A stretch of 64,000 bases of DNA from Lepidodermella squamata (taxonomy: Eukaryota > Animalia > Gastrotricha): contig JBLDXI010000034.1 in the NCBI GenBank assembly GCA_047495785.1, positions 1,318,139-1,382,138 on the forward strand, in the 5' to 3' direction. A program made the position numbers and the translations under genes. A model generated the notes under the pieces. The model worked only from the letters and a program-made list of their open reading frames with translations, was not told the DNA's origin and ran no database searches. Of this stretch, positions 773 to 42,723 are shown piece by piece (position 1 is the first letter of the stretch; each line of letters opens with the position of its first letter).

Positions 773-2319
773 TTACGAATTTTTAGCCGAGGTTTTGACG
801 AAAACGGTTTTCGTCTCAAGGTAGGCGTCCAAGCCTTCCTCGCCCTTCTCTCGACCCCAGCCGCTCATCTTGTAGCCACCGAATGGCGCACCATCGCTAC
901 CAACACCGTAGCAGTTAACCCAGACAGTTCCAGCTCTGAGTCCCTCGCTAATGTAATTGATGGTGTCAACATTCTTCGAGAAAACAGCAGAGCCAAGGCC
1001 ATACGACGTATTGTTGGCTCGCTCAATGACTTCGTCCAAAGTCGAAAATTTCAGAATTTGCATGACCGGGCCGAAAATTTCCTCCCTAGCAATGCGCATG
1101 TCGTCCTTGACATCGGCGAACACAGTTGGCTCGAAGAAATTGCCCTTGCCAGCGATACGTTTGCCGCCGCATTTCAGAGTCGCGCCCTCCTTGATGCCGG
1201 ATTCCACGAGCTCAGCGATCTTCTTCATTGATGGTTCATCGATTTGAGCACCCTGTTCAACGCCGATTTCAAACGGATCGCCAACCGTGCGCTTCTTGGC
1301 ACGAGCAGCACTGGCTTCGACAAATTTGTCGTAGATAGACTCGTGGACGAAGGTTCGCGAGCCAGCAAGGCAGCATTGCCCTTGATTGAAGAAAAGCGCT
1401 TGGTGGGAAGCTTCAACAGCGTAGTCAACTGAAACAAAAGCTTTTTTATCAGAGGCGATCTTCCGAGCATAAACTTACAATCAGCATCCTCGCAAACAAT
1501 GTTAGGACTCTTGCCTCCCAACTCCAGGGTTACTCGCTTTAAATTGGTCGCTCCAGCGGCTTGGGCAATCAAACGGCCAACTTCAGTCGAGCCAGTGAAG
1601 CTGAGCTTATCAACATCCATATGGTTCGACAAAGCAGCGCCGGCAGTTGGGCCATAGCCAGACACGATGTTGACAACGCCATCAGGAAAACCCGCTTCCT
1701 TCGTCAAATGAGCGACGTACAAAGCCGATAGTGGTGATTGTTCAGCCGTCTTCATGACAACTGTGCAACCAGCAGCCAAGGCCGGGGCCAACTTCATCGA
1801 CTGCAGCAACAGCGGGAAGTTCCATGGGACGATGAGACCGGCAACTCCCTTAGGCTCGCGACGGGTGTAGCAGAAAAATGGACCTTCCGTTGGAATGGTC
1901 TTTCCGCAGATTTTGTCAGCCAATCCTCCGCAGTAGCGGTAGTAGTTGATCGCGATTTGAAGATCGACCAAGTAAGCTTCAGCGTACGGCTTTCCGACGT
2001 TCAGAGTCTCGAGCGAGGCTAGGTATTGGCGGTCACGTTCGATCAAGTCAGCGAGTTTAGCAAGCAGACGGCCTCGTTGCACCGGGTCCATGGTTCGCCA
2101 TGGTGAGTTGAGCGCGAACGCCTTGCGCGCTGCTTTCACAGCGACGTCGATATCCTCGGCAAGACCTTCGGCAACGTCGCAGATTTTCTCGCCTGTTGCT
2201 GGGTTGATGGCCGGGAATGTTTTGCCACTGATTGACGGCACCCATTGGTTGTTGATGAAGTGCTGGGTGAATTTCACTTCAGGGTTGCGATTCGGTGGTG
2301 GAACTTGTGGTGCTGCCAT
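773..2319 (-). CDS. Aldehyde dehydrogenase, ALDH1/2 family, without obvious mitochondrial presequence (exons 2319-1479, 1428-773)
   Basis: Motifs [42 protein letters not shown] and [10 protein letters not shown] 50-nt GT-AG intron (1429-1478) joins ORFs 1225..2340 and 773..1228 in frame. Confidence 0.93.
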
Positions 2320-3789
2320 TTTTTGGTTTAATTCGGGCAAAAAAGCGGTTTGTACCGGTGATGCGCAATTGTGCGCGCTTTATACAGCCAACTTCAGTTG
2401 ATAAAAAAATAACGGAATGAACGCGATAAAGCTTATTAATCCAAACCATTTGAGATAAAATGTCCAAACCAGCTGTCTCGGTGATAAACCCAGATTGGGG
2501 ACGTCCGGAAAATAAATCAGTTAAAAAGGGCAGCTCGAAAATGGCACCTTTGCTAATTGAAGCCGGTTGTGTTGATGATAAGGCCAGGTTGCTATTAACA
2601 TCGTTCGTGACGCTGCCTATCATTCCATTTGGCTGTAACTTCTTCCAGTGTGTCATAAGAAGTAGAAAATATCGCATAACGGAGCACTATGGCGATATAC
2701 TGTCAGATCGGGAGAATTTTACAGTCGGGGTCACTTTGACATGCCGAAATGGGGCGAATTCAGCAAATTGGAACATGGCTAGGCGAAAACGCTTTGAAAG
2801 CCCAGGAAAATTGGAAAAATAATTTGATTTTTGAACGAATTTCGAGGACTCAGCAGCTGGACGGTTTCCATCAAAATAACGAAATTGTTTCATTTTTAGA
2901 AGCCCTCTTTGGAGTCCGGCTGTATTAATACTTATTTCAAATTTCAAATTTCGAAGCTTTCCATCAAGCACTTCCGCTAGCTATAAAGACTTCAATTGAG
3001 CACTTTTCGCGGACTGAGGTAAATATCTCAATGTTGTCGGCTTCAAATCTATATCTTTGAAATATGCATTTTCATCGAAGTGTCAAGCAGGTCGACAGTT
3101 TTAGAACGGAAATTGCTCATTAAGATTCCTATCCACGTCGCGGCGAGTTTCAATATCGGGCGTCAATTTCAAAAATAAGTAATTAGAACTTGGATGAGGG
3201 ATTTCTGCTTATATTCGCATATAGTAATGCCATAATACCAGCGTGCGAAACATGTTGAACTTCGACCACCATGTGAACCGATGCTGTTATTTGCGGTCAT
3301 CATTTCAAATTAATTACCTGTTCAACTGCAAATAAATTAAGGCAATCCCATTCATCCGTGATGTGGTATAAACATAGGCGCGGCTTATCGCTACTGCAAC
3401 TGGTATATTTACACACCACCGAAAAAAAACGTTAACCACGCCACATAGCAGCCTCGTTACTGGCATAATGAAGATACGTCTGCTTATCTTCCTATCGAGT
3501 ACCGCAAATTTACCCTGTTTTCTGCTACGAGAGGAGAGCCGATAAGGCTCGTTAAGCACCCTAGATAAAAAACTGCCAGTCATGTCCAAACAAATAGGTA
3601 AAGAGATACTACGAGAGCAAAAAAGGCTGTGCTTTATTTCGCCGGAAGAAAAACAAGTGACTCCCTAAAATATTTGACGAGAAAAAATGCAAGTGTTGTG
3701 AATCCTCAATCAAAAAAAATATAGGCACACGGTCGATTTTCATAAATCAAGAAGAAAAACCAGTTATTTTAATCTCAGCAGCAGTTTTT

Positions 3790-5446
3790 TTACGAATTCT
3801 TCTGCGGAACCTTGGTGATGACGCATTTCGGCTCGGTGTACGCTTCGATGCCGTAGTCGCCCTTCTCACGACCCCAGCCGCTCATCTTGAAACCGCCGAA
3901 CGGCGCCTGGTCCGAGAAAATATCATAGCAATTGACCCAAACAGTTCCAGCGCGAACGCCTTGAGTCAAATAGTTGATCTTATCGACGTCACTCGAGAAA
4001 ATAGCCGCTGCCAAGCCGTAGGAAGTCTTATTCGCACGCTCGATAACTTCATCGAGCTTCTTGAACTTCAAAATCTGCATAACCGGGCCGAAGATCTCCT
4101 CACGGGCGATCGTCATATCGTCCTTGACGTCGGAGAAAACGGTCGGGGCAACGAAGTAACCCTTCGATCCGACACGGCTGCCGCCAGTGTGGAGCACGGC
4201 GCCTTCCTTCTTGCCGGTTTCGATGAGGCCGAGAATCTTCTTCATCTGGCTTTCATCGACCTGGGGGCCTTGCTCGTTCTTCGGGTCGAACGGGTCGCCA
4301 ACAGTGCGCTTCTTCGCGCGAGCAACGCTAGCCTCGACGAACTTGTCGTAGATCGATTCTTCAACAAAAGTCCTCGAACCAGCGGTGCAGCACTGGCCTT
4401 GGTTGAAGAACAGACCGAAGTGAGCCTGTTCGACGGCGTAGTCGAAGTCGCAGTCAGCGAGGATGATGTTAGGGCTCTTGCCGCCGAGCTCAAGGGTAAC
4501 ACGCTTCAAATTGCTTTGAACAGCCATTTCAGCGACCTTGACACCAATCTCCGTCGAGCCGGTGAAAGCAACCTTATCAACGTCAGGATGGCGGGCAAGG
4601 GCAGCACCAGCAGTTGGGCCGTAACCCGAAACGATGTTGATGACACCTTCGGGGAAACCGGCTTCCTTGGCGAGGTTAGCGACGTATAGAGCAGAAAGGG
4701 GGGTCTGCTCTGCAGTCTTCATAACAACAGTGCAACCTGCTGCGAGGGCTGGTCCTAGTTTCCAAGCTTGCATCAGAAGAGGGAAGTTCCACGGGATGAT
4801 CTGACCAACAACTCCCTTTGGTTCATGGCGAGTGTATGCAAAGAAGTCGCCATCTGTTATTACAATGTTATAATTAGTTAAATGTCAGAGCCATAAGAAC
4901 TCACCAACAGGGATGACTTTGCCCTGAATTTTATCCGCAATACCAGCGTAGTAACGAAGATGGCTGATCGAAAGCGGAACATCAATGTTGTATGAGGCAG
5001 AGTAGGGCTTGCCGTTATCGAGAGTCTCCAGCGACTAATAGGAAACAAAAAAATTTTAGGATCCAAACGCAATCGGCCAAACACACCGCAATATAACGAC
5101 GATCGCGCTCCATCAAATCTGCGAGTTTGTACAAGAGGCGACCACGCTGTGATGCGTCCATACGGCGCCAAGGCGAGCCAAGACGAAAAGCATCACGCGC
5201 AGCAGCGACAGCCTTGTCGATTTCGGCCTTGTCGCCCTCGGCAACTTCGACTATTTTCTCGCCTGTCGCTGGGTTCAAAACAGGGAAAGTCTTCTTGCTT
5301 GCCGACTCAACCCACTCGTTGTTGATGAAATGCTTGACATATTTTATTTCCGGCTTGCGGATCGGCTCAGCAATAGCAGCCGCAGACAAAGCACGGGCAG
5401 GAGTGAATCGGGCAGCAAATGCTGCACCACGGATGAGGCTCGACAT
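3790..5446 (-). CDS. ALDH2: Mitochondrial aldehyde dehydrogenase (ALDH2-like) (exons 5446-5087, 5034-4905, 4853-3790)
   Basis: Arg/Ala-rich N-terminal presequence [21 protein letters not shown]; motifs [38 protein letters not shown] and EEIFGPV; two 51-52-nt GT-AG introns. Confidence 0.92.
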
Positions 5447-7332
5447 CACGACGTAACTCGACTAGAAAAGAAAATAAGAATACAATAAGAAAGTTTCTCC
5501 AATCGGAATTTTCTGAATTACGACACTGTAGCTGCTTGGGAGATTACGGGTACTTATGCTTAAAAAATGGTTTCAGCGTTTTTATTAGAAGTCGACAACG
5601 AGAAGGGTAGGTGGTTTGGAGAGAAACTTTCGAAAGTGGATATTGTCTCATGTAACGGTGGCGATGCGATAAGATGTGACTGTTCCTTGAGATACACATG
5701 TAAAGGAAGACTCGTCGATCAACAGGTAACACAGTCAGAAGGCAACAGGACAAGATCGAGAATGGTCCAAACTCCACACTCAGGGGCCTCTCTGCACGTG
5801 AAGAGCGTCACATGATCTGATTTTTGGCGCGTCTTTGCGGTTGAAGGTGAACAAATGATTTTGTTAAAAGCTCAATTACACTGATAAAACAATTTATGCA
5901 ATCCCAAATATCAGTTATTGCTCTATTATCTTTATAAATTTGCCGCATGCTATTTAAAATAAAAAATCGTCTTCTCCAAGTGTCCGCTTACGCATAACGA
6001 GCTCATGAAACTACGCCGAGATAGTGCTTTCGATGAGGATTCACGAAACAATGGGAATCAGTATATGTTACCTACTCCTTACTCCCGAATCTGACGCATG
6101 CCTTGCTTTTAAGATGAAAACTTGAATGTTGCATGGCGAATGGGTTAAACCTTGTCGACTAGCCTGCTTCGCCTAGAATTTCACACCTGGAATAAGACAA
6201 TCCGAATACATCAACATTCATGACTAGATTCCACTTCTGTCCTTCATCACAGTTCGGCAGATGCCGTTTGATCTCAGATCGCCCACTTTGTTGAGCGCAT
6301 GGACTCCGTCTTGACTGAAACAGCCGACCTCAACCTCCCGGATTCCGGACGGACTAGAGTTCTCTGACTGAGTTATGATCGCACGCAGAGCCACCTTTCC
6401 CATAGGAAAGGAGAGTTTATATGCAGAATGCTTTATTCGGAGCTGCAACTAACTACACGCTGGAATTGACTTGTTTCAGCTCACTTATCGCACTTCTTCA
6501 GGAGATGACTTCTAGCCAATAATTGATGCCAATCGCTTGAGCTTTATACGATTCATCGCGAATTAAGACCCTTCAGAAATACTTGAATTTCCCTTCGAGA
6601 TCGCTATTTCACAAAACGATTGAAAGGGAAATAAGTTTTGTCTGTGAAAAAACGTAATTCCTAATTCTCCAAGGCGCTTTGCAGTAGGTGTACGTTTATT
6701 GTGCACATCGATTAGGTAATAGCACTCAGCATGTAACTCCTTGTTGTATGTACATCATTATAGATCAACGCCGCAATCAATCATCACTGAACATGATCGT
6801 GACTAAGCCCCGAGTAGGTCACTTTAACCGCAAATATACAGCGGTCGCCACTGAAGCCGCTAAAAGGAAGATTTTCACTGCTCGGTACCACATTTTCAGT
6901 GCATCATGTTAATTTCTAATGAATAAACATCACAAGATTCCCATTACACAAATCTTAGTAGTAAACGAAAATTCTGCAGTTGATTGGATTGCAGCCTCCG
7001 AATCATAGGTGGAATAAAACATGCATTGCAAAAACAACTGTTTCCACTATGTTTTACTTTTTCAATTTGCCATCAAAGCGACCAGCTCAATGCCAGCAGC
7101 AGAAGTACAAAAAGCGCATCTCAAACAAAATTCAGAAGTTAATACCATAACATGACATAATAAGCCGATGTTTCGCATAACAATGTCCCGTACCAGTGCA
7201 ATAAAAATTAGTGCATGTGGAATTACTATGAGCTGATTTAGCGGTGCCTTTTTCATAATGAGAAAATATAAGAATAAAACCGCTCAGCTGGGCGGAATAA
7301 AACAATAGTGGAAAATTTGCAATAGGTATAGT

Positions 7333-8031
7333 TTAATGCGTCGTGGTTTCGTCGCCCATGCGTTGATACGGCGTTGAAGACGTTTGTCCATCGACGGCTC
7401 GGTTGGCTTCCTTGGTCAAGCCGTATTTCGTGCGAATTTCGTTGTACTTGGTCTCGCGTTCAGCCCTGCGCTCCTCGTTTCGCATGCGACGCTCTTCATC
7501 CTGTTCCTGCATGCGAGCTTCTTCTTGGCGCTCACGGCGCGAGATTCGAGACGAGGAACCGCGGCAACAACAGCAGTAAATGCAGCAGCAGAAGGTGACC
7601 AAAATGAGGAAACCACCGACGGATAACAGGCAAATCGCCATGAGCAATAAGGAAACAGCGCAGGTGTGATACTTAACCGAACCCATCGCGCAGGTTCCAT
7701 CATAGGGTATACCAAAAATCGTATTTTTCGGCATGGGCAAACAAGCTTTTTTCGATTCGCAATAGTAGCACTAAAAAAGAGGAATTGACCTATAACTTAA
7801 ACATAAGATAACCAATATTTACCTCGTTGTCATATTGCAAACAGTCTGAACAGGAAGCATTGTACATTTCACAATCTATAAATATAAAATAATTTGCGGG
7901 ATTCATAGATGATATTCCAGCTTCAACTAACGTATTATCGGCTTGGAAGTCGTTGTATTTTGAGCAAATACACCATCGACGAGACAAAAAGCAGCAAAAA
8001 GTGCAGCAGTCACAACAAACTTAATCATCAT
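7333..8031 (-). CDS. PTTG1IP/PBF-like type I membrane protein (signal peptide, PSI domain, TM helix, Cys cluster, charged tail); 3 exons
   Basis: Signal MMIKFVVTAALFAAFCLVDGVFA; PSI-like CEMYNASCSDCL..CYYCESKKAC; TM followed by CCCIYCCCC; tail ...RAERETKYNEIRTKYGL...PYQRM, matching the PTTG1IP C-terminal pattern with a YxxPhi motif. Confidence 0.8.
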
Positions 8032-8187
8032 TGTAGTTAAATGTTCTAGGAATAAACAGCAATGATCAGCGGGTCGTGTTGTGTAGCAAAAAATCGAAGT
8101 ACAAGAATAAAATTGCAAGCTTGATTGCTAAAATCATACAAATTTTGATCAATAAATCACACATAAGCTTGATTAGAAAGCACTATG

Positions 8188-8881
8188 TTACTCGTTGTCC
8201 AATTTGGAATACTTGTTCTGAATACCGTACTTCATTCTGATCTCATCATAACGTGACTCGCGAGCTTCATTGCGAGCAGCACGGCCGGATTTCTTATCCT
8301 CCTCTTGCTGATTAGTCCAGGTCACCTCAATATTGCTAGTTTTTCAAAACCTTATTTTACGCGAAATGTTGAGAAAACAATTAGGCTTACTCCATGTCTA
8401 CCCTTGGTCTCTTGTGGCAACGAATGCAGCAACAACAACAGATGAGCAATCCGGCAAGGAGAAGACCACCCCCCACTGACAAAATGCTGATTGCCAACAC
8501 CAACAAACTTACATCGCATGTCTTGTACATGGCGGTATCCAATGAGCATTCATCATCAAGCGGTAAACCAAAAGGCATATTGCTGGGAAGGGGTCGACAT
8601 TCTTTGAGAGAACCGCAATAATAACACGAAGTGGATGCATCCAAGCAAGTCTCGCAGCTCTGACCATACTTGGAGCAATCTTTAATTCAAGCGAAATGAA
8701 CAAAAAATGATCATGAAACGAATATGGCGCAAGAATATTTGGTACCAAAAGAGGCTTCAGTTGTAGTAATTGGATCAACTGAAGCAGTAGTTGTGTCAGG
8801 TTCAGGAGCTGAGGTGGTAGGGTCGTCAGCTAGTCCAGACACGAATAATAAACAAAAAATGAAACATATTGGGAACTCCAT
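8188..8881 (-). CDS. Second PTTG1IP/PBF-like paralog with Thr-rich stalk; 3 exons
   Basis: Signal MEFPICFIFCLLFVSGLA; CSKYGQSCETCL..CYYCGSLKEC; TM followed by CCCC; spliced last exon ...RNEARESRYDEIRMKYGIQNKYSKLDNE*. Confidence 0.78.
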
Positions 8882-35861: not shown

Positions 35862-36657
35862 TTTTGTGGAATAAATAAAATGAAAAATCATTTAGAGTAG
35901 TTAGAAAACGTAAATTTAGTCGTGTGCCTCACAGACACGCGCACGAATAATCAATCATCCAGTAAAAATAAGAAATTATCGATATTTTTCGAGTGGTTTG
36001 TTCGTTTGTGAGCCTGCTCAAATAAGAAGCAGGAAACTTATTAGCAAAGATCACAAGAGTCATTTTTACTGTCTTGGCCCGGATTGGCTATCATTCAATA
36101 TCCTGTGCCTCCTAAACATCGATGCATTTCAAAATGCATATCTGGCTAAAAGTATTTTGAAAATAAATTTCAGCTCGTTTGGCCAAAAATGCCAACAAGG
36201 TATTGGATTATGGATGATATTTCCCCATTTTCTGCCCCTATTCCTATTTGCACAACATTATTTGGTATTATATCCTTTTTTACACAATATTGTGGTACTT
36301 TGCTATTTTACATAACTGACCTTAACTCCAACCCCAACCATAACCCTGACCGCAACCCTAACCTGGAAGAAGGTATCGCCTGGTATCAATAATTTCACCA
36401 GTTGCGCGGCAGCTTCAACCTTTTAAAGTTTCGAACTCATACGAAAAAATATCGACAAATTAACAAAACATAGTTTACAGCTTTATTCGTGATAACTTAT
36501 TATTAGAACTTGAAACTTGACAGGAAAAAACGAAAAATTGAGAAAAAGAATGCTCTGAATAGCTTCTAGCACTTTCAGAATGTAAGTGTTGGCAACGTCA
36601 CAGTCCATAATATAATCCAATCTTGCAAGCAATAGGTCAAATTGAAAGCTCATAATA

Positions 36658-38453
36658 TCAAGCAATGTCGGCTGCAGGTGGCCTGTTGCCGAATTCACAG
36701 AGATTAACCTTTAACTGGTCAATTCGTTGCGCCAATGTCTCCTTCACGTGGGCATCCACGCCCGGATTTGAAATGGAAATAGACGAGACAGCTCGTTTGA
36801 GTTCAAGCTCAGTCATGTCGAAAAAGTCGGCGGGAATGCTAACGATAGCCATCTCATCCCACCTGATAGGCTCATCACAACCATATCCTTTTTCGATCAA
36901 GTCCAACTTTACGTCGAAAGTTTTGAGGGCCGCACATGCACGTCTGAGCTGTTGCTGGCGCTGGCCAATGGGCTTCAGGGCTGACATCCAATTACTGAAA
37001 CCGCTCAAAGCATCGATGCTATCAGATTTACCGTCCAATAAACTAACAAATTCACATAAAAAGAGCAGACTTTCGTTAGTTAGTGGAAGTGAAAACATTT
37101 TATCAATCAAATATCCGAACAAATACGAGGTGGGACGGTTGTCACTCAGAATTAACCCTGCCCTAACAGCGATGAGCTCGGCCAAAATGTAAATCCAGAT
37201 TTCGTGGAGATCGTGTGCCATGACAACTTCGATTACTTGTCGCCTTAATTCTTCGACGTCGTACTTGTCCGCATCATCCAGCAGAAATTTGAAAATTTCT
37301 TTATAACTTTCAACTTTGATACTTTCGAGCTGCCGCCTGCGGAACTCCAGCTTCTTCGTCTGAACATGTGTAACGACTGGAGGCTCAGTTCTTCGAATAA
37401 AGAAAGATCTGCCGTCGCTATTCCAGCGGGAAATTAATCGCACTGAATCGCCTCTTGGAACGGCGCCACAATTCGTCGAATTGTTGCAACCTTGAACCTG
37501 AGTCCATATCAACCCACAGTGAGGGCACTTTCGAAAGGGATGCTCTTTATCAAGACTGTCCGTCAAATAGCTCCTGAATTGCTGGCAATGGGCGAAGTAA
37601 CCATTAATGATGGCGTTAAGTTCCTCTCGAACCTTCTCGTACCAGAAGTAATCATCGAAATGATTGGCGTCCAGCCCGTTTTCATCCACAAACCGTTGGA
37701 CAAGTTCATCACAATAGCTTCGTATTTCCTTCAGCATTGAAAACATAAAATCCTGCCTGTCGAAAATGTCCTCAATTGACTGCAACTTCTCCATCACGCA
37801 GCTGACGAAAACGTTCGCTTTTTCATTCATTTCCTGGGCCGATCTCAAAATTCCCCGTTCACTTTTCTTCAAGTCGAAGTAGCGAGAAAGATTGTCGACG
37901 GAAATGTTGATCTCCTTTGCACCAGGCAGGTCGTCTCGGCCGATAAATTCGCCTATGACCTGCTCGTAATTTGTATTCAATTTGGAAACAAACACGACGC
38001 TTTTGATATTGAAGCGATGCAGCATCGTAGACCGAATCTTTCCTTCAAGATCGGCTGAGCTCGTCCGCAAATTGTCGGCGTGATCCCAATGTGTCACCAT
38101 GATGGTCATGTTATCTTCCAGGTCTTCTGCCATAGGATCGACTACGGTCTCGACGTCTCGAACCATTCTATCGATTCGGTTGTCAAACTTGCAAATAATG
38201 AAGATTCGCGTCACAAGCCGGTAGCATAGCGCTTTAGCAATGTGTATGGCGTGTTCGACCCTTTTGTCCATAGGCTCGTAACCAGGCGTGTCGGCGAAGT
38301 CGAACAGCGGCATTCCATAAACAGTGGTTTCAGTTGTAACGCTCACGGCACAATCGCGAGTCTCATTCGCCTCCAATTCACGGCCAATCAATCCCTCGGC
38401 AATCGTTGTCTTCCCGCTACCTGTCGCTCCGATGAGAACAACGTACTGCAAGG
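36658..38453 (-). CDS. P-loop GTPase (AIG1/GIMAP/septin-like TRAFAC) with helical region and Cys motif; one long exon, probably spliced to the upstream kinase
   Basis: G1 GATGSGKTT, G2 SVT, G3 DTPG, G4-like THWD; later CPHCGLIWTQVQGCNNSTNCG and GYGCDEPIRWDEM; 618-aa ORF 36658..38514. Confidence 0.8.
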
Positions 38454-38809
38454 CTGCAACGACAGAGGGTTTACAAATTATCGACTGAGAAATGAGAAAG
38501 CGTTCTATCCCCATTTCACATGCATTTCCCGCGACACTCCATAATAATTGAGATTTTTAGATAGGTTTCGTTGTTATATTCGAGGAAGCATCAAAATTTC
38601 GAATATGTCAACTTCGTTTAATTGACAATGCCGCCCGCAGTTAGTCAGCCTACGCTTTGCACCCAAGACCGAAGTCAGGTTTGAAAAAGTGACAAGCTGA
38701 CCAATCAGTGCACGGCGGTTTCGAAGGTTCCAAGCTCAATAACGGGAAGAAAAAATGGGGCAATGGAACTTTCCTCCTTGTATCAAAGAAATTCAAGATA
38801 TTATTATAC

Positions 38810-41450
38810 TTAAGAATGGATGTCCAGATGCTTGTGACATGGTGAATCGCTGCTCCGGCTTCTCCCTCATCAAATTGATCAGCAAGTCATCCAAGTTTTC
38901 CGCATCGCGATAGCCAAATTCCGATGCCTTTTTTGGTGACTTGAACTAAGCAATTTCTTGCAATCAAACACAAGATTTTTATAAAAAATAAGAGTTCCAA
39001 CCTCCATGTCGAGAGAAACAAGCTCATAAATTGTAGCTCCCAGCGACCAATTATCACATTTCAAAGTATAAATTGAACCAGTCGCAAATTCCGGTGCAAA
39101 GTAAGCAAGAGTGCCAGCCAATGTATCAGTGACCCTTTCGTAGATCGTAGACAATAATTCACATGCTATTGTAATCTGAATGCAAGCGGCTTACTCAGTT
39201 TTATCTTTCGCCAGCCCAAAATCTCCCAGCTTGATCACGCGGCGTCTCGAACAAAGAAAGATATTCTGATAGATTGAATATGAAAACAGTAATAAGATGG
39301 AAATGAAGCGAATTGAATGAAACGATTACGGAAAAGGTTAAAATCTAGTTATCCAATTTTCTTATCCTCTTTGATGCTAACAATCCGATTAGCGCTATTC
39401 CACAGACGGAAACAACTTGCACATGCTCATACTTCTCAAAGGGGCTATAAATGTTGTAAAAAATGTAATTTCGGAGATCTATACTATGTACAATCTATTA
39501 TTGGCCGGTTACCCTTTTCCTTTCTTTCAGGGTTATAGGTAATTGAATCTTTGCTGCACAGTATTTAAAATGAAAACTTCTCGAACTTACATCAGGCTTG
39601 ATGTCCCGATGCACCAGGTTGCGTTTGTGAACAAAGTTGAGCGCATTTATCATCTGCTTCGACCAAGATTGAATTGTCAGCATCGAGAATCGCTCATTTT
39701 TCGCCCTCATCTCATTGATGGCATCTCGCAACGACCCGTCCTCGCAGTATTCCATAATAATGTAAAAAACAGGCCCATCCACGCTATTTTCTGAAATACA
39801 AGACAATATTTTTCAGACCAGGTCGCGTCATGGGGGCCGAGGTTAATAGCTTTCAAAATTAAATTAAAAACATAATACGGGTCCTCCTGTACCGGAACCA
39901 AATTAGCTGTAAGCGGAACTAAATTTCGCAATATTTTTTGGGCCTGAGACCACTTTTCAGAATATCCAGAGATATTAAAATAGACCATCGTATAATTTTA
40001 TATACATTATTTTAAATTTCAGCGTGAAAGTCTGTGCAAGACGTAGCATTCACTATAGAAATCATTCGTTGCCAAAAATTCTTAGAATTTTTCGGAAATC
40101 AACATTTAACTGCACCAAATTTCAAATCAAAAGCTGGCACCTAACACAAATGATCAAAAGAGCAACTTTTCGAATATTTTTTCTATACCGATGATTAGGA
40201 ACTGGGGTTAGGGGGCTAGGGCGGTTAGAACTAGAATTAGGTCGATTTTCGAGCTTTTCCCAATATCAATTTTAGGGCCCTTGTACTTCACCAAAAACTA
40301 TTTTATTTTCAAGTGGAAAAATGGCTACGCGTTTTCGTAACCTCGTTTTTCGTTTGTAAAAACCGAAAATTTAACAATTTCAAAATTCAGATCACTGGTA
40401 AAAACGTTGAGCGAATTATTCTAAAATGAATAAACTTTAGCTTATCGACAGAACTACAATCGCTTCTAATTGAATCCTGAATCTCTACGAATGACTGTGC
40501 ATAAAACTGGGTGAATTTTATAGGTCAAATTTTAACGAATTTTAGGCAGGATTCTATATTCTAAGGTCTAAAATGTGGCTATTTGTAATTTGGCCCTTTT
40601 ACCTTCCTTTACCTATAAGCCAGTTGGAGCATGCCTGTTTTTCGCCGTTTCGGTCTGCGTGACAATCGGCATTGTTTGTTCCCATGATTCCTCAAATTTT
40701 AAGCAGACGTTCAGTTTATTTTGTTTATTTTGTAAGGCAAATTTTGCCCTGAAATCGTGCCGCGAGCCTAAATTTTTATTGCCCATTTGTCATTTGACAC
40801 GTCCATTATGTGACCACTTTTTAGGCGGGAAACGACGCCTTCTCCTATTGGTTCATTCAAATACTACGCGGGCGATTCAAATAGTTGTTTTTTGTGGAAA
40901 ATGATCGTTTTTACAACAATTGGCACGCGTTTTTCGATAAAATAGCGCCATTTAGCGCTAAATTGTTGCCAAGCCTATTTTTTCTAATGAAAAAGTGATC
41001 ATTTGAATCGCCCGCGTAGTATTTGAATTAACCAATAGGAGAAGGCGTCGTTTCCCGCCTAAAAAGTGGTCACATAATGTCAATTTTTAAAATAATCCTA
41101 TTGATAAAATTTCCAATAAAGCTAACCTTCGAAAGACTCGATCACCGAGACAATGTTCTTGCATTCAACGTGTTGCATGTTCTCAGCCTGAAATGTGTTT
41201 AAAGAGCAGCATAAATAAGCAAAAGAGAAGCGTAAAAGTCAACCTCTTTCTGTGCCATTTTCCACACTTTCTCGCAAAGATTAGGACGTCCCAATGTCAA
41301 CGCAGCTATCGCAGACTTGTAAACGCGCTTCGCGGCAAAAATCGTATCGTCGGCGTCTATTTTCTTGCAACGGAATACATCGCCGAAACCACCCGATTTT
41401 ATACGATCGATGGAGTGATACTTTCCGGAACCTCGCCAAATTCCCGCCAT
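38810..41450 (-). CDS. NEK-like Ser/Thr protein kinase domain (exons 41450-41244, 41187-41127, 39790-39591, 39265-39195, 39134-39002, 38945-38810), possibly the 5' part of a kinase-GTPase fusion gene
   Basis: SGGFGDVF, FAAKRV, YIIMEYCEDGSL, LVHRDIKPDNIFL, IKLGDFGLAK, GTLAYFAPE, CDNWSLG, PEQRFTMSQASGHPFL; all junctions are GT-AG and in frame. Confidence 0.85.
40804..41079. mobile_element. MITE with ~78-bp terminal inverted repeats in a kinase intron
   Basis: CATTATGTGACCACTTTTTAGGCGGGAAACGACGCCTTCTCCTATTGGTT...CGGGCGATTCAAAT (from 40804) is the near-perfect reverse complement of ATTTGAATCGCCCGCG...AAAAAGTGGTCACATAATG (to 41079). Confidence 0.75.
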
Positions 41451-42723
41451 TGCAACGTCGCTGCAGTGCCCACGGTTACCCAATATTTCAGTAATAATAA
41501 TATCGTCTATCATAATATAATATTAGGTCCTAAACTTCGACGAACGCCTTTTTCAATTTTTAAAATTCAGTTCGCTCGTAAAAAATGCAAAGAAATTTGC
41601 CTGAGGAATCTTGATCGACAGGTAAATTGTGGAGATTTTAGGAGCTCACCTTGATTTTTGAAGATATGTGAAGCAACCTGTAAATTTGGACATTTTCCCT
41701 AAGATTTGGACACATTATTGAACACGCATATGCTAATTAGACCATATTAAATAATAAGTTATATTAATTACTGACTCGTCTCATTGAGAGGGAAATTCTG
41801 ATAATGTTAAGGCCTAATCATAAAATCAAGGTGAAATAAAAAAATTTCGAAAAAGTAGAAAGAAATCACAAGGTTTTTATTTTGATGCTGACCAAAATGA
41901 TACATTTTCATGCAAAACTATAAGGAATTTTTCAAGACATTTTCAAGCTTAAAATTCTCGATGAAAAATAATCAATGAGAAAAATATTGAGGCGAACATG
42001 CGATCAGCGATTTCAAGGAAAATTTGCATTTATTGGAAAAATTCTTTGTACTAATATATAGGTTTTGCATATCGAATATCAGCGCTTAAATATTAGGTTC
42101 ACCCTTAAACACAATATAAAACAAAATAAGTCATCAAACCGCAATCGCAAATAATGAGCTCCAATCTCACAAATGCGCACAAATAGCCAAATGAAGAGGC
42201 AGAAACAAAAGACTTTTGACTTGTCACCTATATCACCTTGAAATGGATGTAAACAAGCCTAAATCCGAGTTATAGATTTACGCTAACGATTTATATAGAT
42301 TTATAGCGATGATTTTTAGATCGAAATCGGTGAATATTTAGCGAACTTCTCAACTTGGATCGAAATTCCTCAGGTTGATTCAAAATTAAAAAGCAGAATG
42401 AAAGCGAGAGAATAAGCAAGGCTATATCGTAGCATCGTTTTTCAGTAATTTAAAAGTAGTAAAAGTATAAGAAATTGGCACACGTGTGTAAGCAGCAGAG
42501 CACGCGCCAATCAAGCTGGATCAAGTTGACGTATGAAATTATTGTTCTAACATGTCAGCATCCGTAGTGACAAGTCGACTTTCGATGAGAAATTATGAAA
42601 AATTGCCAGCCACAATATTAAAAGAAATTGAAATTTCGGGGAAAAAACCGGAGAGAGCCAGGGAATGGAACCATCACGACAAAGGGTTCACAACAACAAA
42701 AAATGGCGTATTCATATTGAATT

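What the first reader, a model, noticed from the sequence alone, without database searches (positions are those of the whole stretch)
36658..41450. Probable kinase-GTPase-Cys-motif fusion protein (~867 aa) with an immune-like architecture
Seen: the kinase ends HPFL-A|GTATAA (donor 38809). An acceptor GTTGCAG| at 38454 restores the frame to give ...HPFL-T-LQYVVLIGATGSGKTT, and the seven exons sum to 2604 nt (868 codons). The GTPase part is one 1.8-kb exon, whereas the kinase has six short exons. It carries CPHCGLIWTQVQGCNNSTNCG, resembling the CPxC...GCNHMxC pattern of the RBR-ligase catalytic RING2 but with Asn where His usually is. Known: AIG1/GIMAP-type GTPases act in innate immunity, and the standard kinase-GTPase fusions (ROCO/LRRK) use Roc-COR, which is not seen here. 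Inference: a lineage-specific kinase + GTPase + possible E3 or zinc module, perhaps formed by capture of an intronless (retroposed or foreign) gene.
Basis: partly seen in the sequence, partly recalled or inferred. Interest (0 to 1): 0.75.

Follow-up and report, generated by a model that had tools for sequence, protein, structure and literature searches.

The report
Kinase fused to GTPase-zinc-module protein
One seven-exon animal-type gene most likely joins a complete protein kinase, with no linker, to a protist-type GTP switch that ends in an unstudied five-cysteine module; this domain combination is undescribed, but its function and its transcript remain untested.

Summary

The fusion is supported by comparison, not RNA. 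Three diverged paralogs in this genome (about 45% identity) have the closest kinase directly upstream. Each has a phase-1 intron (52, 59, 402 nt) at the same codon after HP[FY]L. None has an ATG in the GTPase frame before the P-loop.

The 3' exon belongs to an unnamed family of about 450-aa standalone proteins (Tetrahymena, Paramecium, Physarum, Pelomyxa; 555 hits). These combine a GIMAP-like G domain, a helical stalk and five invariant cysteines. None of the best 150 hits carries a kinase.

It is not ROCO, and it fails Pfam AIG1. It is not an RBR ligase. However, the first 21-23 columns of the cysteine motif match RING2 profiles well above shuffled controls.

No transcript evidence could be found here. 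The scan has already reported this family on other DNA of the same genome. The joined 867-aa protein was never assembled or searched.

The parts
41244..41450 (-). Exon 1: start codon, Gly-rich loop (SGGFGDV) and the VAIK-type lysine (AAK). An alternative in-frame ATG at 41513 would add 21 aa.
   Evidence: weak Pkinase hit to profile positions 1-38
41127..41187 (-). Exon 2 (61 nt), the alpha-C/beta-4 region (AENMQHVECKNIV...). It ends in phase 1.
   Evidence: the same exon is present in the paralogs
39591..39790 (-). Exon 3 (200 nt), from the hinge to the catalytic loop. HRD lies at 39611-39603.
   Evidence: Pkinase 49.4 bits, E 5.4e-13. The nearest solved kinases are CDPK, GCN2, ULK1 and NEK1.
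39195..39265 (-). Exon 4 (71 nt). DFG lies at 39223-39215.
39002..39134 (-). Exon 5 (133 nt): activation segment, APE and the DxWSxG motif.
   Evidence: Pkinase E 3.5e-7
38810..38945 (-). Exon 6 (136 nt): the end of the kinase domain, ...RFTMSQASGHPFL plus the first base of the junction codon.
   Evidence: Pkinase profile positions 227-263 of 263
38454..38809 (-). Intron 6 (356 nt, GTATAA...TTGCAG, phase 1). It holds the in-frame ATG at 38514 and an ATTAAA at 38622.
   Evidence: The same intron position and phase occur in three diverged paralogs (59, 52 and 402 nt).
37882..38453 (-). Exon 7, part 1: the G domain. The P-loop GATGSGKT is at 38430-38407, DTPG at 38292-38281 and THWD (G4) at 38094-38083.
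   Evidence: MMR_HSR1 26.7-26.9 bits. AF2 pLDDT is above 90. Matches: GIMAP7, IRGB10, GIMAP2, Era, FeoB, Toc34 by Foldseek; EngA/Der and GIMAP4 by profile.
37582..37857 (-). Exon 7, part 2: three long helices (E7 protein residues 199-290) forming a stalk after the G domain.
   Evidence: AF2 secondary structure, pLDDT 86-96. The stalk is conserved in the standalone family.
37381..37539 (-). Exon 7, part 3: first half of the cysteine module. It holds the invariant C309, C312, C322 and C328 (motif at 37527-37465) and two beta-hairpins.
   Evidence: Invariant columns in alignments of 10 and 60 sequences, nearly invariant in one of 71. The same motif occurs in 87 of the 152 proteins held by then (the 150 listed hits and two cluster members). 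hhalign to RING2 gives 91% over 21-23 columns.
36922..37362 (-). Exon 7, part 4: a helical insert of about 150 aa (residues 364-510) that splits the cysteine module. It is absent from the typical 450-aa relatives.
   Evidence: Fold matches are only generic helical bundles, Z<=5.5.
36817..36894 (-). Exon 7, part 5: second half of the cysteine module. It holds the fifth invariant cysteine (C525, 36879-36877) in the motif GC-x3-I-x-W-x2-M.
36658..36816 (-). Exon 7, part 6: C-terminal helices and the stop codon (36660-36658). There is no CaaX box.
36482..36487 (-). AATAAA polyadenylation-type signal about 170 nt after the stop codon.

Best explanation
Shown or strongly inferred from sequence: 41450-36658 (minus strand) is one seven-exon gene. 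Its product of about 867 aa (888 aa from the upstream ATG) has three parts. (i) A complete, apparently active Ser/Thr protein kinase. (ii) Joined to it with no linker, a GIMAP-like TRAFAC G domain with a helical stalk. (iii) A module with five invariant cysteines, here split by a lineage-specific helical insert.

The 3' exon descends from a family of standalone proteins of about 450 aa; every named member is a protist, and the sister clade comes from unidentified eukaryotes. One ancestral event placed it behind a kinase gene whose own coding sequence ended at HP[FY]L. The N-terminal 15-20 residues of the GTPase were replaced by a phase-1 splice acceptor. The fused gene then duplicated to four loci, plus one near-identical twin.

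Inferred mechanism: the GTPase acts as the switch. GTP-dependent dimerisation or oligomerisation of the G domain, as in GIMAPs, septins and IRGs, brings the N-terminal kinase domains together for trans-autophosphorylation and downstream signalling. The cysteine module binds one zinc ion and, together with the helical insert, serves as the partner- or ligand-binding end. A role in defence or stress signalling is only an analogy.
For: Gene structure: all splice sites are GT..AG and the frame is preserved.

Comparative proof of the join:
- The closest kinase exon-3 matches in the genome (54-63% identity) lie directly upstream of each GTPase paralog.
- All four loci have a phase-1 intron at the identical codon (356, 59, 52, 402 nt).
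- In three loci the GTPase frame is closed 4-16 codons upstream of the acceptor and has no ATG, so it cannot be translated on its own with an intact P-loop.
- Introns of 52 and 59 nt leave no room for a promoter.

A kinase-only paralog ends at the same point (...HPYFNS*).

The kinase motifs (Gly-rich loop, AAK, HRD, DFG, APE) are seen in the window copy; exons of the paralogs show them where I read them. The G1, G3 and G4 motifs are conserved in all four loci.

Family: a profile search gave 555 hits, the best at E 1.4e-79, with a typical length of about 450 aa. C309, C312, C322, C328 and C525 are invariant or nearly so. Named members come from Pelomyxa, Physarum, Tetrahymena and Paramecium. 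No HRD kinase motif occurs in the best 150 hits, and Pfam finds no kinase in 10 of them.

In this genome the family exists only in the fused loci. The fused copies form one clade (SH-like support 100) that is sister (95) to standalone proteins.

Structure: the AF2 model has mean pLDDT 86.9, and GIMAP7 is the top Foldseek match at E 4.6e-7.
Against: No RNA evidence was obtained. The word search, a metagenome protein scan, an exact-product look-up and an exact DNA pattern all came back blank. The tools warn that records of this genome and its near relatives may be hidden.

The window copy, unlike the three diverged paralogs, has an in-frame ATG (38514) inside the 356-nt intron, plus an ATTAAA at 38622. 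A separate or alternative GTPase transcript therefore cannot be excluded for this copy.

The twin copy on C28 is identical across this region, so it adds no test.

The mechanism is entirely by analogy. I could not read model coordinates, so zinc binding and the role of each cysteine are not shown. The full-length joined protein was never searched or folded.
Confidence: 0.78

Rival explanations
1. In the window copy there are two adjacent genes, or two isoforms. The kinase ends at HPFLSIIIS*. A standalone 618-aa GTPase is made from the ATG at 38514, driven by a promoter inside the 356-nt interval.
For: The ATG at 38514 is in frame. It would give a 21-aa N-terminal extension, similar in length to the 14-19-aa N-termini of two sister-clade standalone relatives. 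An ATTAAA at 38622 could end a kinase-only message.
Against: The three diverged paralogs have no such ATG and have a stop 4-16 codons upstream of the acceptor. The extension is therefore not conserved and looks like intron sequence. An open run of 35 codons has a chance probability of about 0.2, by my calculation from (61/64)^35. The junction position and phase are identical in all loci.
Confidence: 0.12
2. The cysteine module is a diverged, one-zinc relative of the RBR catalytic RING2 (Rcat), with C322 as an active-site cysteine. The protein would then be a three-enzyme kinase-GTPase-transthiolation machine.
For: A profile of 70 family modules against a profile of 8 RING2 domains from this genome gives hhalign probability 91% and P 1e-6 over 21-23 columns (k-CPxC-x4-e/w-K-x2-GC-n/d). 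This places C322 on the catalytic Cys column. None of 300 column shuffles reached the score (36.1 against a maximum of 25.5). The IBR profile gives only 3.8%. Reciprocal HMM searches in a small local database put each family at or near the top of the other's non-self hits. The count and order of the five invariant cysteines fit the first zinc site plus the catalytic Cys of Rcat; this reading comes from my own knowledge of HHARI and HOIP.
Against: The match covers only half a small domain, and global alignment fails (17.8%). There is no RING1, no IBR, no second zinc site (FCWxC) and no His after the Cys. The Pfam IBR model hits neither the protein nor its relatives. A module profile against all PDB sequences finds no RBR protein. 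The fold searches match RBR proteins only through the unrelated helical Ariadne domain, at noise level (Z about 4). A single-sequence hhalign gave 3.4%. Zinc knuckles converge easily.
Confidence: 0.1
3. The locus is a decaying or non-functional chimera: a pseudogene made by a chance juxtaposition.
Against: Five loci keep long open frames of about 600-632 codons. All catalytic and nucleotide-binding motifs and all five cysteines are kept at about 45% identity. The twin copies encode identical GTPase parts.
Confidence: 0.03

Closest known systems
Unnamed family of standalone GTPase / five-cysteine-module proteins; named members are protists (e.g. Tetrahymena XP_001026731.1, Paramecium A0CEG8, Physarum EP00026_P007742, Pelomyxa KAH3757173.1)
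   Same: G domain, helical stalk, the CPxC-x9-GC-x5-CG motif and the distal GC-x3-I-x-W motif all align. E values reach 1.4e-79, and the five cysteines are invariant.
   Different: Those proteins are about 450 aa, start with their own Met and have no kinase. The window protein has a kinase in place of the N-terminal 15-20 residues, and a helical insert of about 150 aa inside the cysteine module. I found no functional study of the family. One member is labelled 'SRP receptor beta', apparently through a weak SRPRB hit.
ROCO proteins (LRRK2, DAPK1, Dictyostelium Roco kinases)
   Same: A protein kinase and a regulatory GTPase sit in one polypeptide. In DAPK1 the kinase is also N-terminal. In concept, the GTPase state gates the kinase output.
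   Different: There is no Roc above threshold, no COR dimerisation domain and no repeats. The G domain here is GIMAP/Era-like, and the kinase is joined without any linker.
GIMAP/AIG1 and IRG immunity GTPases
   Same: These are the best structural matches: GIMAP7 3zjc at E 4.6e-7, then IRGB10, GIMAP2 and Toc34. They share the TH-x-D type G4 motif, helices that follow the G domain, and the lack of a catalytic Gln after DTPG.
   Different: The window protein does not reach Pfam AIG1 at all. By sequence profile, EngA/Der (1.8e-20) outranks GIMAP4 (1.2e-9). There is no transmembrane or lipid anchor, and the cysteine module is extra.
RBR E3 ligase catalytic domain (RING2/Rcat)
   Same: A local, order-specific motif match runs through the catalytic-Cys column: CPxC, spacing of 9, K-x-x-GC.
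   Different: Only 21-23 columns match. The second zinc site, RING1 and IBR are absent, and there is no family or fold hit.

Membership tests
Eukaryotic protein kinase (Pfam PF00069) | Profile match over the gathering score, and the catalytic motifs (Gly-rich loop, VAIK Lys, HRD, DFG, APE) | tested here: met
   Exon 3 alone scores 49.4 bits against a cut-off of 31.7. The other exons hit successive parts of the profile (1-38, 127-147, 154-192, 227-263). All the motifs are read. The exons were tested one by one; the joined domain was not searched.
TRAFAC P-loop GTPase (Pfam MMR_HSR1) | Profile match over the cut-off, and the G1 (GxxxxGKT), G3 (DTPG) and G4 (T/N-x-x-D) motifs | tested here: met
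   26.7-26.9 bits against 21.9. The motifs GATGSGKT, DTPG and THWD are conserved in the paralogs and the family.
AIG1/GIMAP | Pfam AIG1 (PF04548) match | tested here: not met
   The window protein has no AIG1 hit at E<=1. Of 71 aligned relatives, 33 touch AIG1 at E<=1, the best at 6.3e-10.
AIG1/GIMAP | GIMAP-like fold of the G domain plus the following helices | tested here: inconclusive
   GIMAP7 is the top Foldseek hit (E 4.6e-7, TM on the target 0.42-0.56). Era, FeoB, IRG and Toc34 follow closely.
ROCO (Roc-COR kinases) | A Roc domain over threshold followed by a COR domain | tested here: not met
   Roc scores 17.4-17.5 bits against a cut-off of 27. No COR family is listed at E<=0.1 or at E<=1.
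RBR E3 ligases | The RING1-IBR-RING2 triad, with Pfam IBR matches | tested here: not met
   IBR is absent from the hits of the ORF. A genome-wide IBR scan found 34 matches, none at this locus or at its paralogs.
RBR E3 ligases | A complete Rcat: two zinc sites and a catalytic Cys in the GC-x-H-x context | tested here: inconclusive
   The first half matches (hhalign 91%, 21-23 columns; 0 of 300 shuffles reach the score). The second half is absent, and global alignment gives 17.8%.
Standalone GTPase / five-Cys-module family (unnamed) | Full-length profile similarity and the five invariant cysteines in order | tested here: met
   555 hits at E<=1e-3, 38 of them at E<=1e-30. Matched stretches cover the G domain, the stalk and both halves of the module. 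C309, C312, C322, C328 and C525 are invariant.
Zinc-binding module | Four ligands clustered around one metal ion | not testable with these tools
   Model coordinates are not exposed, so only secondary structure and pLDDT were available.

The most novel reading that the evidence does not exclude
The five-cysteine module is an ancient, one-zinc relative of the RBR Rcat domain and keeps a reactive cysteine (C322). This gene family would then couple a kinase, a GTP switch and a ubiquitin-like transthiolation activity in one chain. The widespread standalone relatives would be GTP-gated E3-like enzymes that nobody has recognised.
Probability: 0.1. Interest if true: 0.85.

Novelty: new variant of a known kind. 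Interest (0 to 1): 0.55.

Why it matters
Kinase-GTPase single-chain switches are known almost only as ROCO proteins such as LRRK2 and DAPK1. Here a different GTPase lineage has been welded to a kinase with no linker. It is GIMAP-like and carries a conserved cysteine module that has not been studied.

Because the fusion is linker-free, it gives a compact natural system for asking how nucleotide state can gate a kinase.

It also draws attention to a eukaryotic family of several hundred proteins, present in Tetrahymena, Paramecium and Physarum. This family has no Pfam domain for its C-terminal half, has at least one misleading database name, and has a motif that statistically resembles the catalytic half of RBR ligases.

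Finally, the exon structure is a clear example of new-gene origin by capture of an intronless gene behind an existing gene. The donor site was created exactly at the old stop codon, and the captured gene may be foreign.

Tried and rejected
Transcript evidence. All four attempts came back blank: the word-based protein search, a tblastn-confirmed scan of metagenome contigs, an exact-product look-up of the 618-aa ORF and an exact 30-nt pattern from exon 7.

The twin copy on C28 was useless for testing intron 6. The two copies are identical from 39823 to 36706, introns included.

The ROCO reading was rejected. An operon or trans-splicing reading was rejected because three paralogs have no ATG after the acceptor.

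MZB (PF09369) was considered after one hit in P0010. P0010 is three identical tandem repeats, and MZB is not among the 25 families most members match.

The Foldseek hits to ARIH1 and ARIH2 turned out to align the helical insert with the Ariadne domain at Z about 4, not the cysteine motif.

The kinase subfamily could not be resolved from single exons; CDPK, GCN2, ULK1 and NEK1 all score alike.

A maximum-likelihood tree with the mixture model did not finish, so a FastTree run was used instead. The two C28b pieces were left out of that tree.

I did not establish the organism. Earlier notes say 'probably a rotifer', but the window is about 42% G+C, and I leave it unidentified.

The joined 867-aa protein was not built, searched or folded.
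Full report
**What is in the sequence**

The region is eukaryotic, with short GT..AG introns. On the minus strand I confirmed seven exons: 41450-41244, 41187-41127, 39790-39591, 39265-39195, 39134-39002, 38945-38810 and 38453-36658. They sum to 2604 nt, and all six introns are GT..AG (56, 1336, 325, 60, 56 and 356 nt).

The first six exons hit successive parts of Pfam Pkinase. Exon 3 alone scores 49.4 bits. They carry the Gly-rich loop, the AAK lysine, HRD, DFG, APE and DxWSxG.

Exon 6 ends ...GHPFL plus one base. The donor G is at 38809 and the last intron base is 38454. The junction codon ACC (Thr) leads into LQYVVLIGATGSGKTT. An AATAAA follows the stop at 36487.

I never assembled, searched or folded the joined 867-aa protein.

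**Is it really one gene?**

I could get no RNA evidence. The word search, a metagenome scan, an exact-product look-up and an exact 30-nt pattern were all blank. The tools warn that records of this genome or near relatives may be hidden.

The decisive evidence comes from comparison within the genome (121 Mb, 151 contigs). The exon-7 protein has four distinct homologous loci, plus a near-identical twin of the window locus on contig C28. The kinase exon-3 sequences closest to the window's lie directly upstream of each GTPase paralog, at 63, 58 and 54% identity.

In all four loci a GT..AG phase-1 intron sits at exactly the same codon, after HP[FY]L or HSFL and before L-[PQ]-Y-[IV]-V-x-I-G. The intron lengths are 356, 59, 52 and 402 nt. 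In the three diverged paralogs the GTPase frame is closed by a stop 4-16 codons upstream of the acceptor. That stretch contains no ATG, so the P-loop can be translated only through the splice. Introns of 52 and 59 nt also leave no room for a promoter.

A fifth kinase paralog, at C28:302 kb, has no GTPase. It ends ...EHPYFNS* at the same point. This shows that the fusion point is the natural C-terminus of the kinase.

The window copy alone has an in-frame ATG (38514) inside the intron, and an ATTAAA at 38622. A separate or alternative GTPase transcript therefore cannot be excluded for this copy. I give that reading about 12%. The C28 twin is identical from 39823 to 36706, introns included, so it offers no test.

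**What the 3' exon is**

Pfam sees only MMR_HSR1, at residues 4-102 (26.9 bits). Roc is below threshold, and COR, AIG1 and IBR are absent.

A profile of the four paralogs was searched with HMMER against 1.84 billion cluster representatives. It found 555 proteins at E<=1e-3, the best at 1.4e-79. They are typically about 450 aa. They align over the G domain, three long helices and a cysteine module.

Five cysteines are invariant or nearly so: C309, C312, C322, C328 and C525 of the exon-7 protein. They lie in the motifs R-x-CPxC-x3-W-x2-V-x-GC-x3-T-x-CG and, distally, GC-x3-I-x-W-x2-M. Among the 152 proteins held at that point (the 150 listed hits plus two cluster members), 87 carry the first motif.

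Named members come from Pelomyxa, Physarum, Tetrahymena and Paramecium. The Tetrahymena protein is labelled 'SRP receptor beta', and the Paramecium protein 'G domain-containing protein'. The protein atlas adds ciliate-dominated clusters and one cluster whose single placed member is a cnidarian.

None of the 150 best hits has an HRD kinase motif. Pfam found no kinase in ten of them, including the longest. The closest relative I could place on a contig has no kinase upstream.

In this genome the family occurs only in the kinase-fused loci. In a FastTree phylogeny of 69 rows, with the two split C28b pieces left out, the fused copies form one clade (SH-like support 100). That clade is sister (95) to four standalone proteins from unidentified eukaryotes. 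This points to one fusion event followed by duplication.

The window-lineage proteins differ from the family norm by a helical insert of about 150 aa between the fourth and fifth cysteines.

**Structure**

AlphaFold2 with a 71-row alignment gave mean pLDDT 86.9. The model shows a G domain, a stalk of three long helices, small beta-hairpins around the cysteines, a helical bundle (the insert) and a final beta/helical part.

Foldseek against the PDB ranks GIMAP7 first (E 4.6e-7). IRGB10, GIMAP2, Era, FeoB, IIGP1 and Toc34 follow. By sequence profile, EngA/Der comes first (1.8e-20), with GIMAP4 at 1.2e-9.

'GIMAP-like' is therefore a fair structural description, but membership of Pfam AIG1 is not met.

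The C-terminal 302 residues folded alone (pLDDT 77.5) match nothing above helical-bundle noise.

**The RING2 question**

Several tests speak against an RBR relationship.
- There is no Pfam IBR hit to the protein or to 71 relatives.
- A genome-wide IBR scan found 34 sites, none of them here.
- A module-only profile against all PDB sequences gives no RBR protein.
- The ARIH1 and ARIH2 rows in Foldseek align the helical insert with the Ariadne domain at Z about 4.
- A single-template hhalign gave 3.4%.
- Global profile alignment fails at 17.8%.

Some tests speak for a local relationship.
- A 70-sequence module profile against a profile of eight RING2 domains from this genome gives 91% probability and P 1e-6. 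It covers 21-23 columns running from k-CPxC through K-x-x-GC-n/d, so C322 falls on the catalytic-Cys column.
- The positive control, RING2 against IBR, gives 94%. The module against IBR gives 3.8%.
- None of 300 column-shuffled RING2 profiles exceeds a score of 25.5, against the real score of 36.1.
- In a local database of 4284 frames, each HMM ranks the other family at or near the top of its non-self hits. E values there are 0.006 and 0.016.

I conclude that this is not an RBR ligase and not a complete Rcat. It may be distant homology or convergence of a zinc knuckle-hairpin. I put E3-like chemistry at about 10%.

**How it probably works (inferred)**

Both enzymatic parts keep their catalytic signatures in the exons I read, at about 45% identity between paralogs. 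This argues for function.

By analogy with GIMAPs, septins and IRGs, GTP binding would drive G-domain dimerisation or oligomerisation. With the kinase attached directly to the first strand of the G domain, this would bring the kinase domains together for trans-activation. ROCO proteins are the known precedent for a GTPase gating a kinase within one chain.

The cysteine module, presumably with one zinc, and the lineage-specific helical insert are the likely partner-binding end. None of this was tested.

**Origin**

The GTPase part is a single exon in three of the four loci; C28b has one 60-nt intron. The family's named members are all protists, and no standalone copy exists in this genome.

A published precedent exists. 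In the rotifer Adineta vaga, the GTPase Arl17 is inferred to be a eukaryote-to-eukaryote transfer from an amoebozoan, and it is present as four paralogs (PMC8358228). I did not identify the organism of this window, and the sister clade is unlabelled, so horizontal transfer remains untested.

**Context from the scan**

Earlier notes show that the scan has already reported this family on other DNA of the same genome (s1-384359, s1-421484, s1-404943). It has also reported other kinds of kinase-GTPase fusions there.

One of those notes claims a spliced cDNA contig giving about 887 residues. That would fit the C28 twin, which lacks one codein-frame triplet after the upstream ATG. I could not reproduce that evidence and do not count it.

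I checked one other fusion myself, at C7:2.117 Mb. There the kinase runs into a different GTPase within a single exon, so it is an independent fusion. Kinase-GTPase fusion thus appears recurrent in this genome.

**Verdict**

This is a real and probably functional gene with an undescribed domain combination. It is a new variant among kinase-GTPase switch proteins. Interest is moderate, with a speculative upside in the cysteine module.

Noticed in passing
window 40804-41081 (intron 2 of the gene): A hairpin element of about 278 nt has 90-nt inverted arms (40804-40893 and 40990-41079, 93% complementary). It is present in the window copy and absent from the otherwise collinear twin on contig C28. 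It looks like a recent MITE-type insertion.
   Followed up: partly
window 36706-39823 vs G000:C28:364-367 kb (L001/L010): The twin loci are 100% identical over 3.1 kb, including four introns. Upstream of 39823 they differ by many substitutions and indels (overall identity 92-98.5%). This suggests recent gene conversion, or a haplotype pair with a conversion tract.
   Followed up: partly
L022 (G000:C28:299500-308500), about 2200-3350: A kinase-only paralog with the same exon layout ends ...EHPYFNS*, exactly where the fused genes splice. No GTPase exon follows. It may resemble the pre-fusion kinase, or it may have lost the 3' exon.
   Followed up: partly
L023 (G000:C7:2115500-2121500), about 1204-3218, minus strand: This is a different kinase-GTPase fusion. 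The last kinase exon runs straight into another P-loop GTPase (LLLGKTSVGKST...DTPG) within one 336-codon open frame, with no intron at the join. It is an independent fusion event.
   Followed up: partly
The C28 twin has a 3-nt in-frame deletion there. The true start codon is unresolved (867 or 888 aa).
   Followed up: no
protein P0010 (ENA, 812 aa): A database protein that consists of three identical tandem copies of the stalk plus the cysteine module of this family. It is probably an assembly artefact or a very recent tandem duplication. It produced a misleading MZB (PF09369) hit.
   Followed up: no
protein P0014 = Tetrahymena thermophila XP_001026731.1: It is annotated as 'signal recognition particle receptor beta subunit', but it is a full-length member of the GTPase / five-cysteine family. 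The name appears to come from a weak SRPRB hit and looks like a misannotation.
   Followed up: no
L008 (G000:C28:258000-267999), about 5100-8700: Intron 2 of the C28a paralog is about 3.6 kb. It contains repeated ORF fragments (for example, near-duplicate 'IREWGYIRV'-type peptides) that suggest transposon debris.
   Followed up: no
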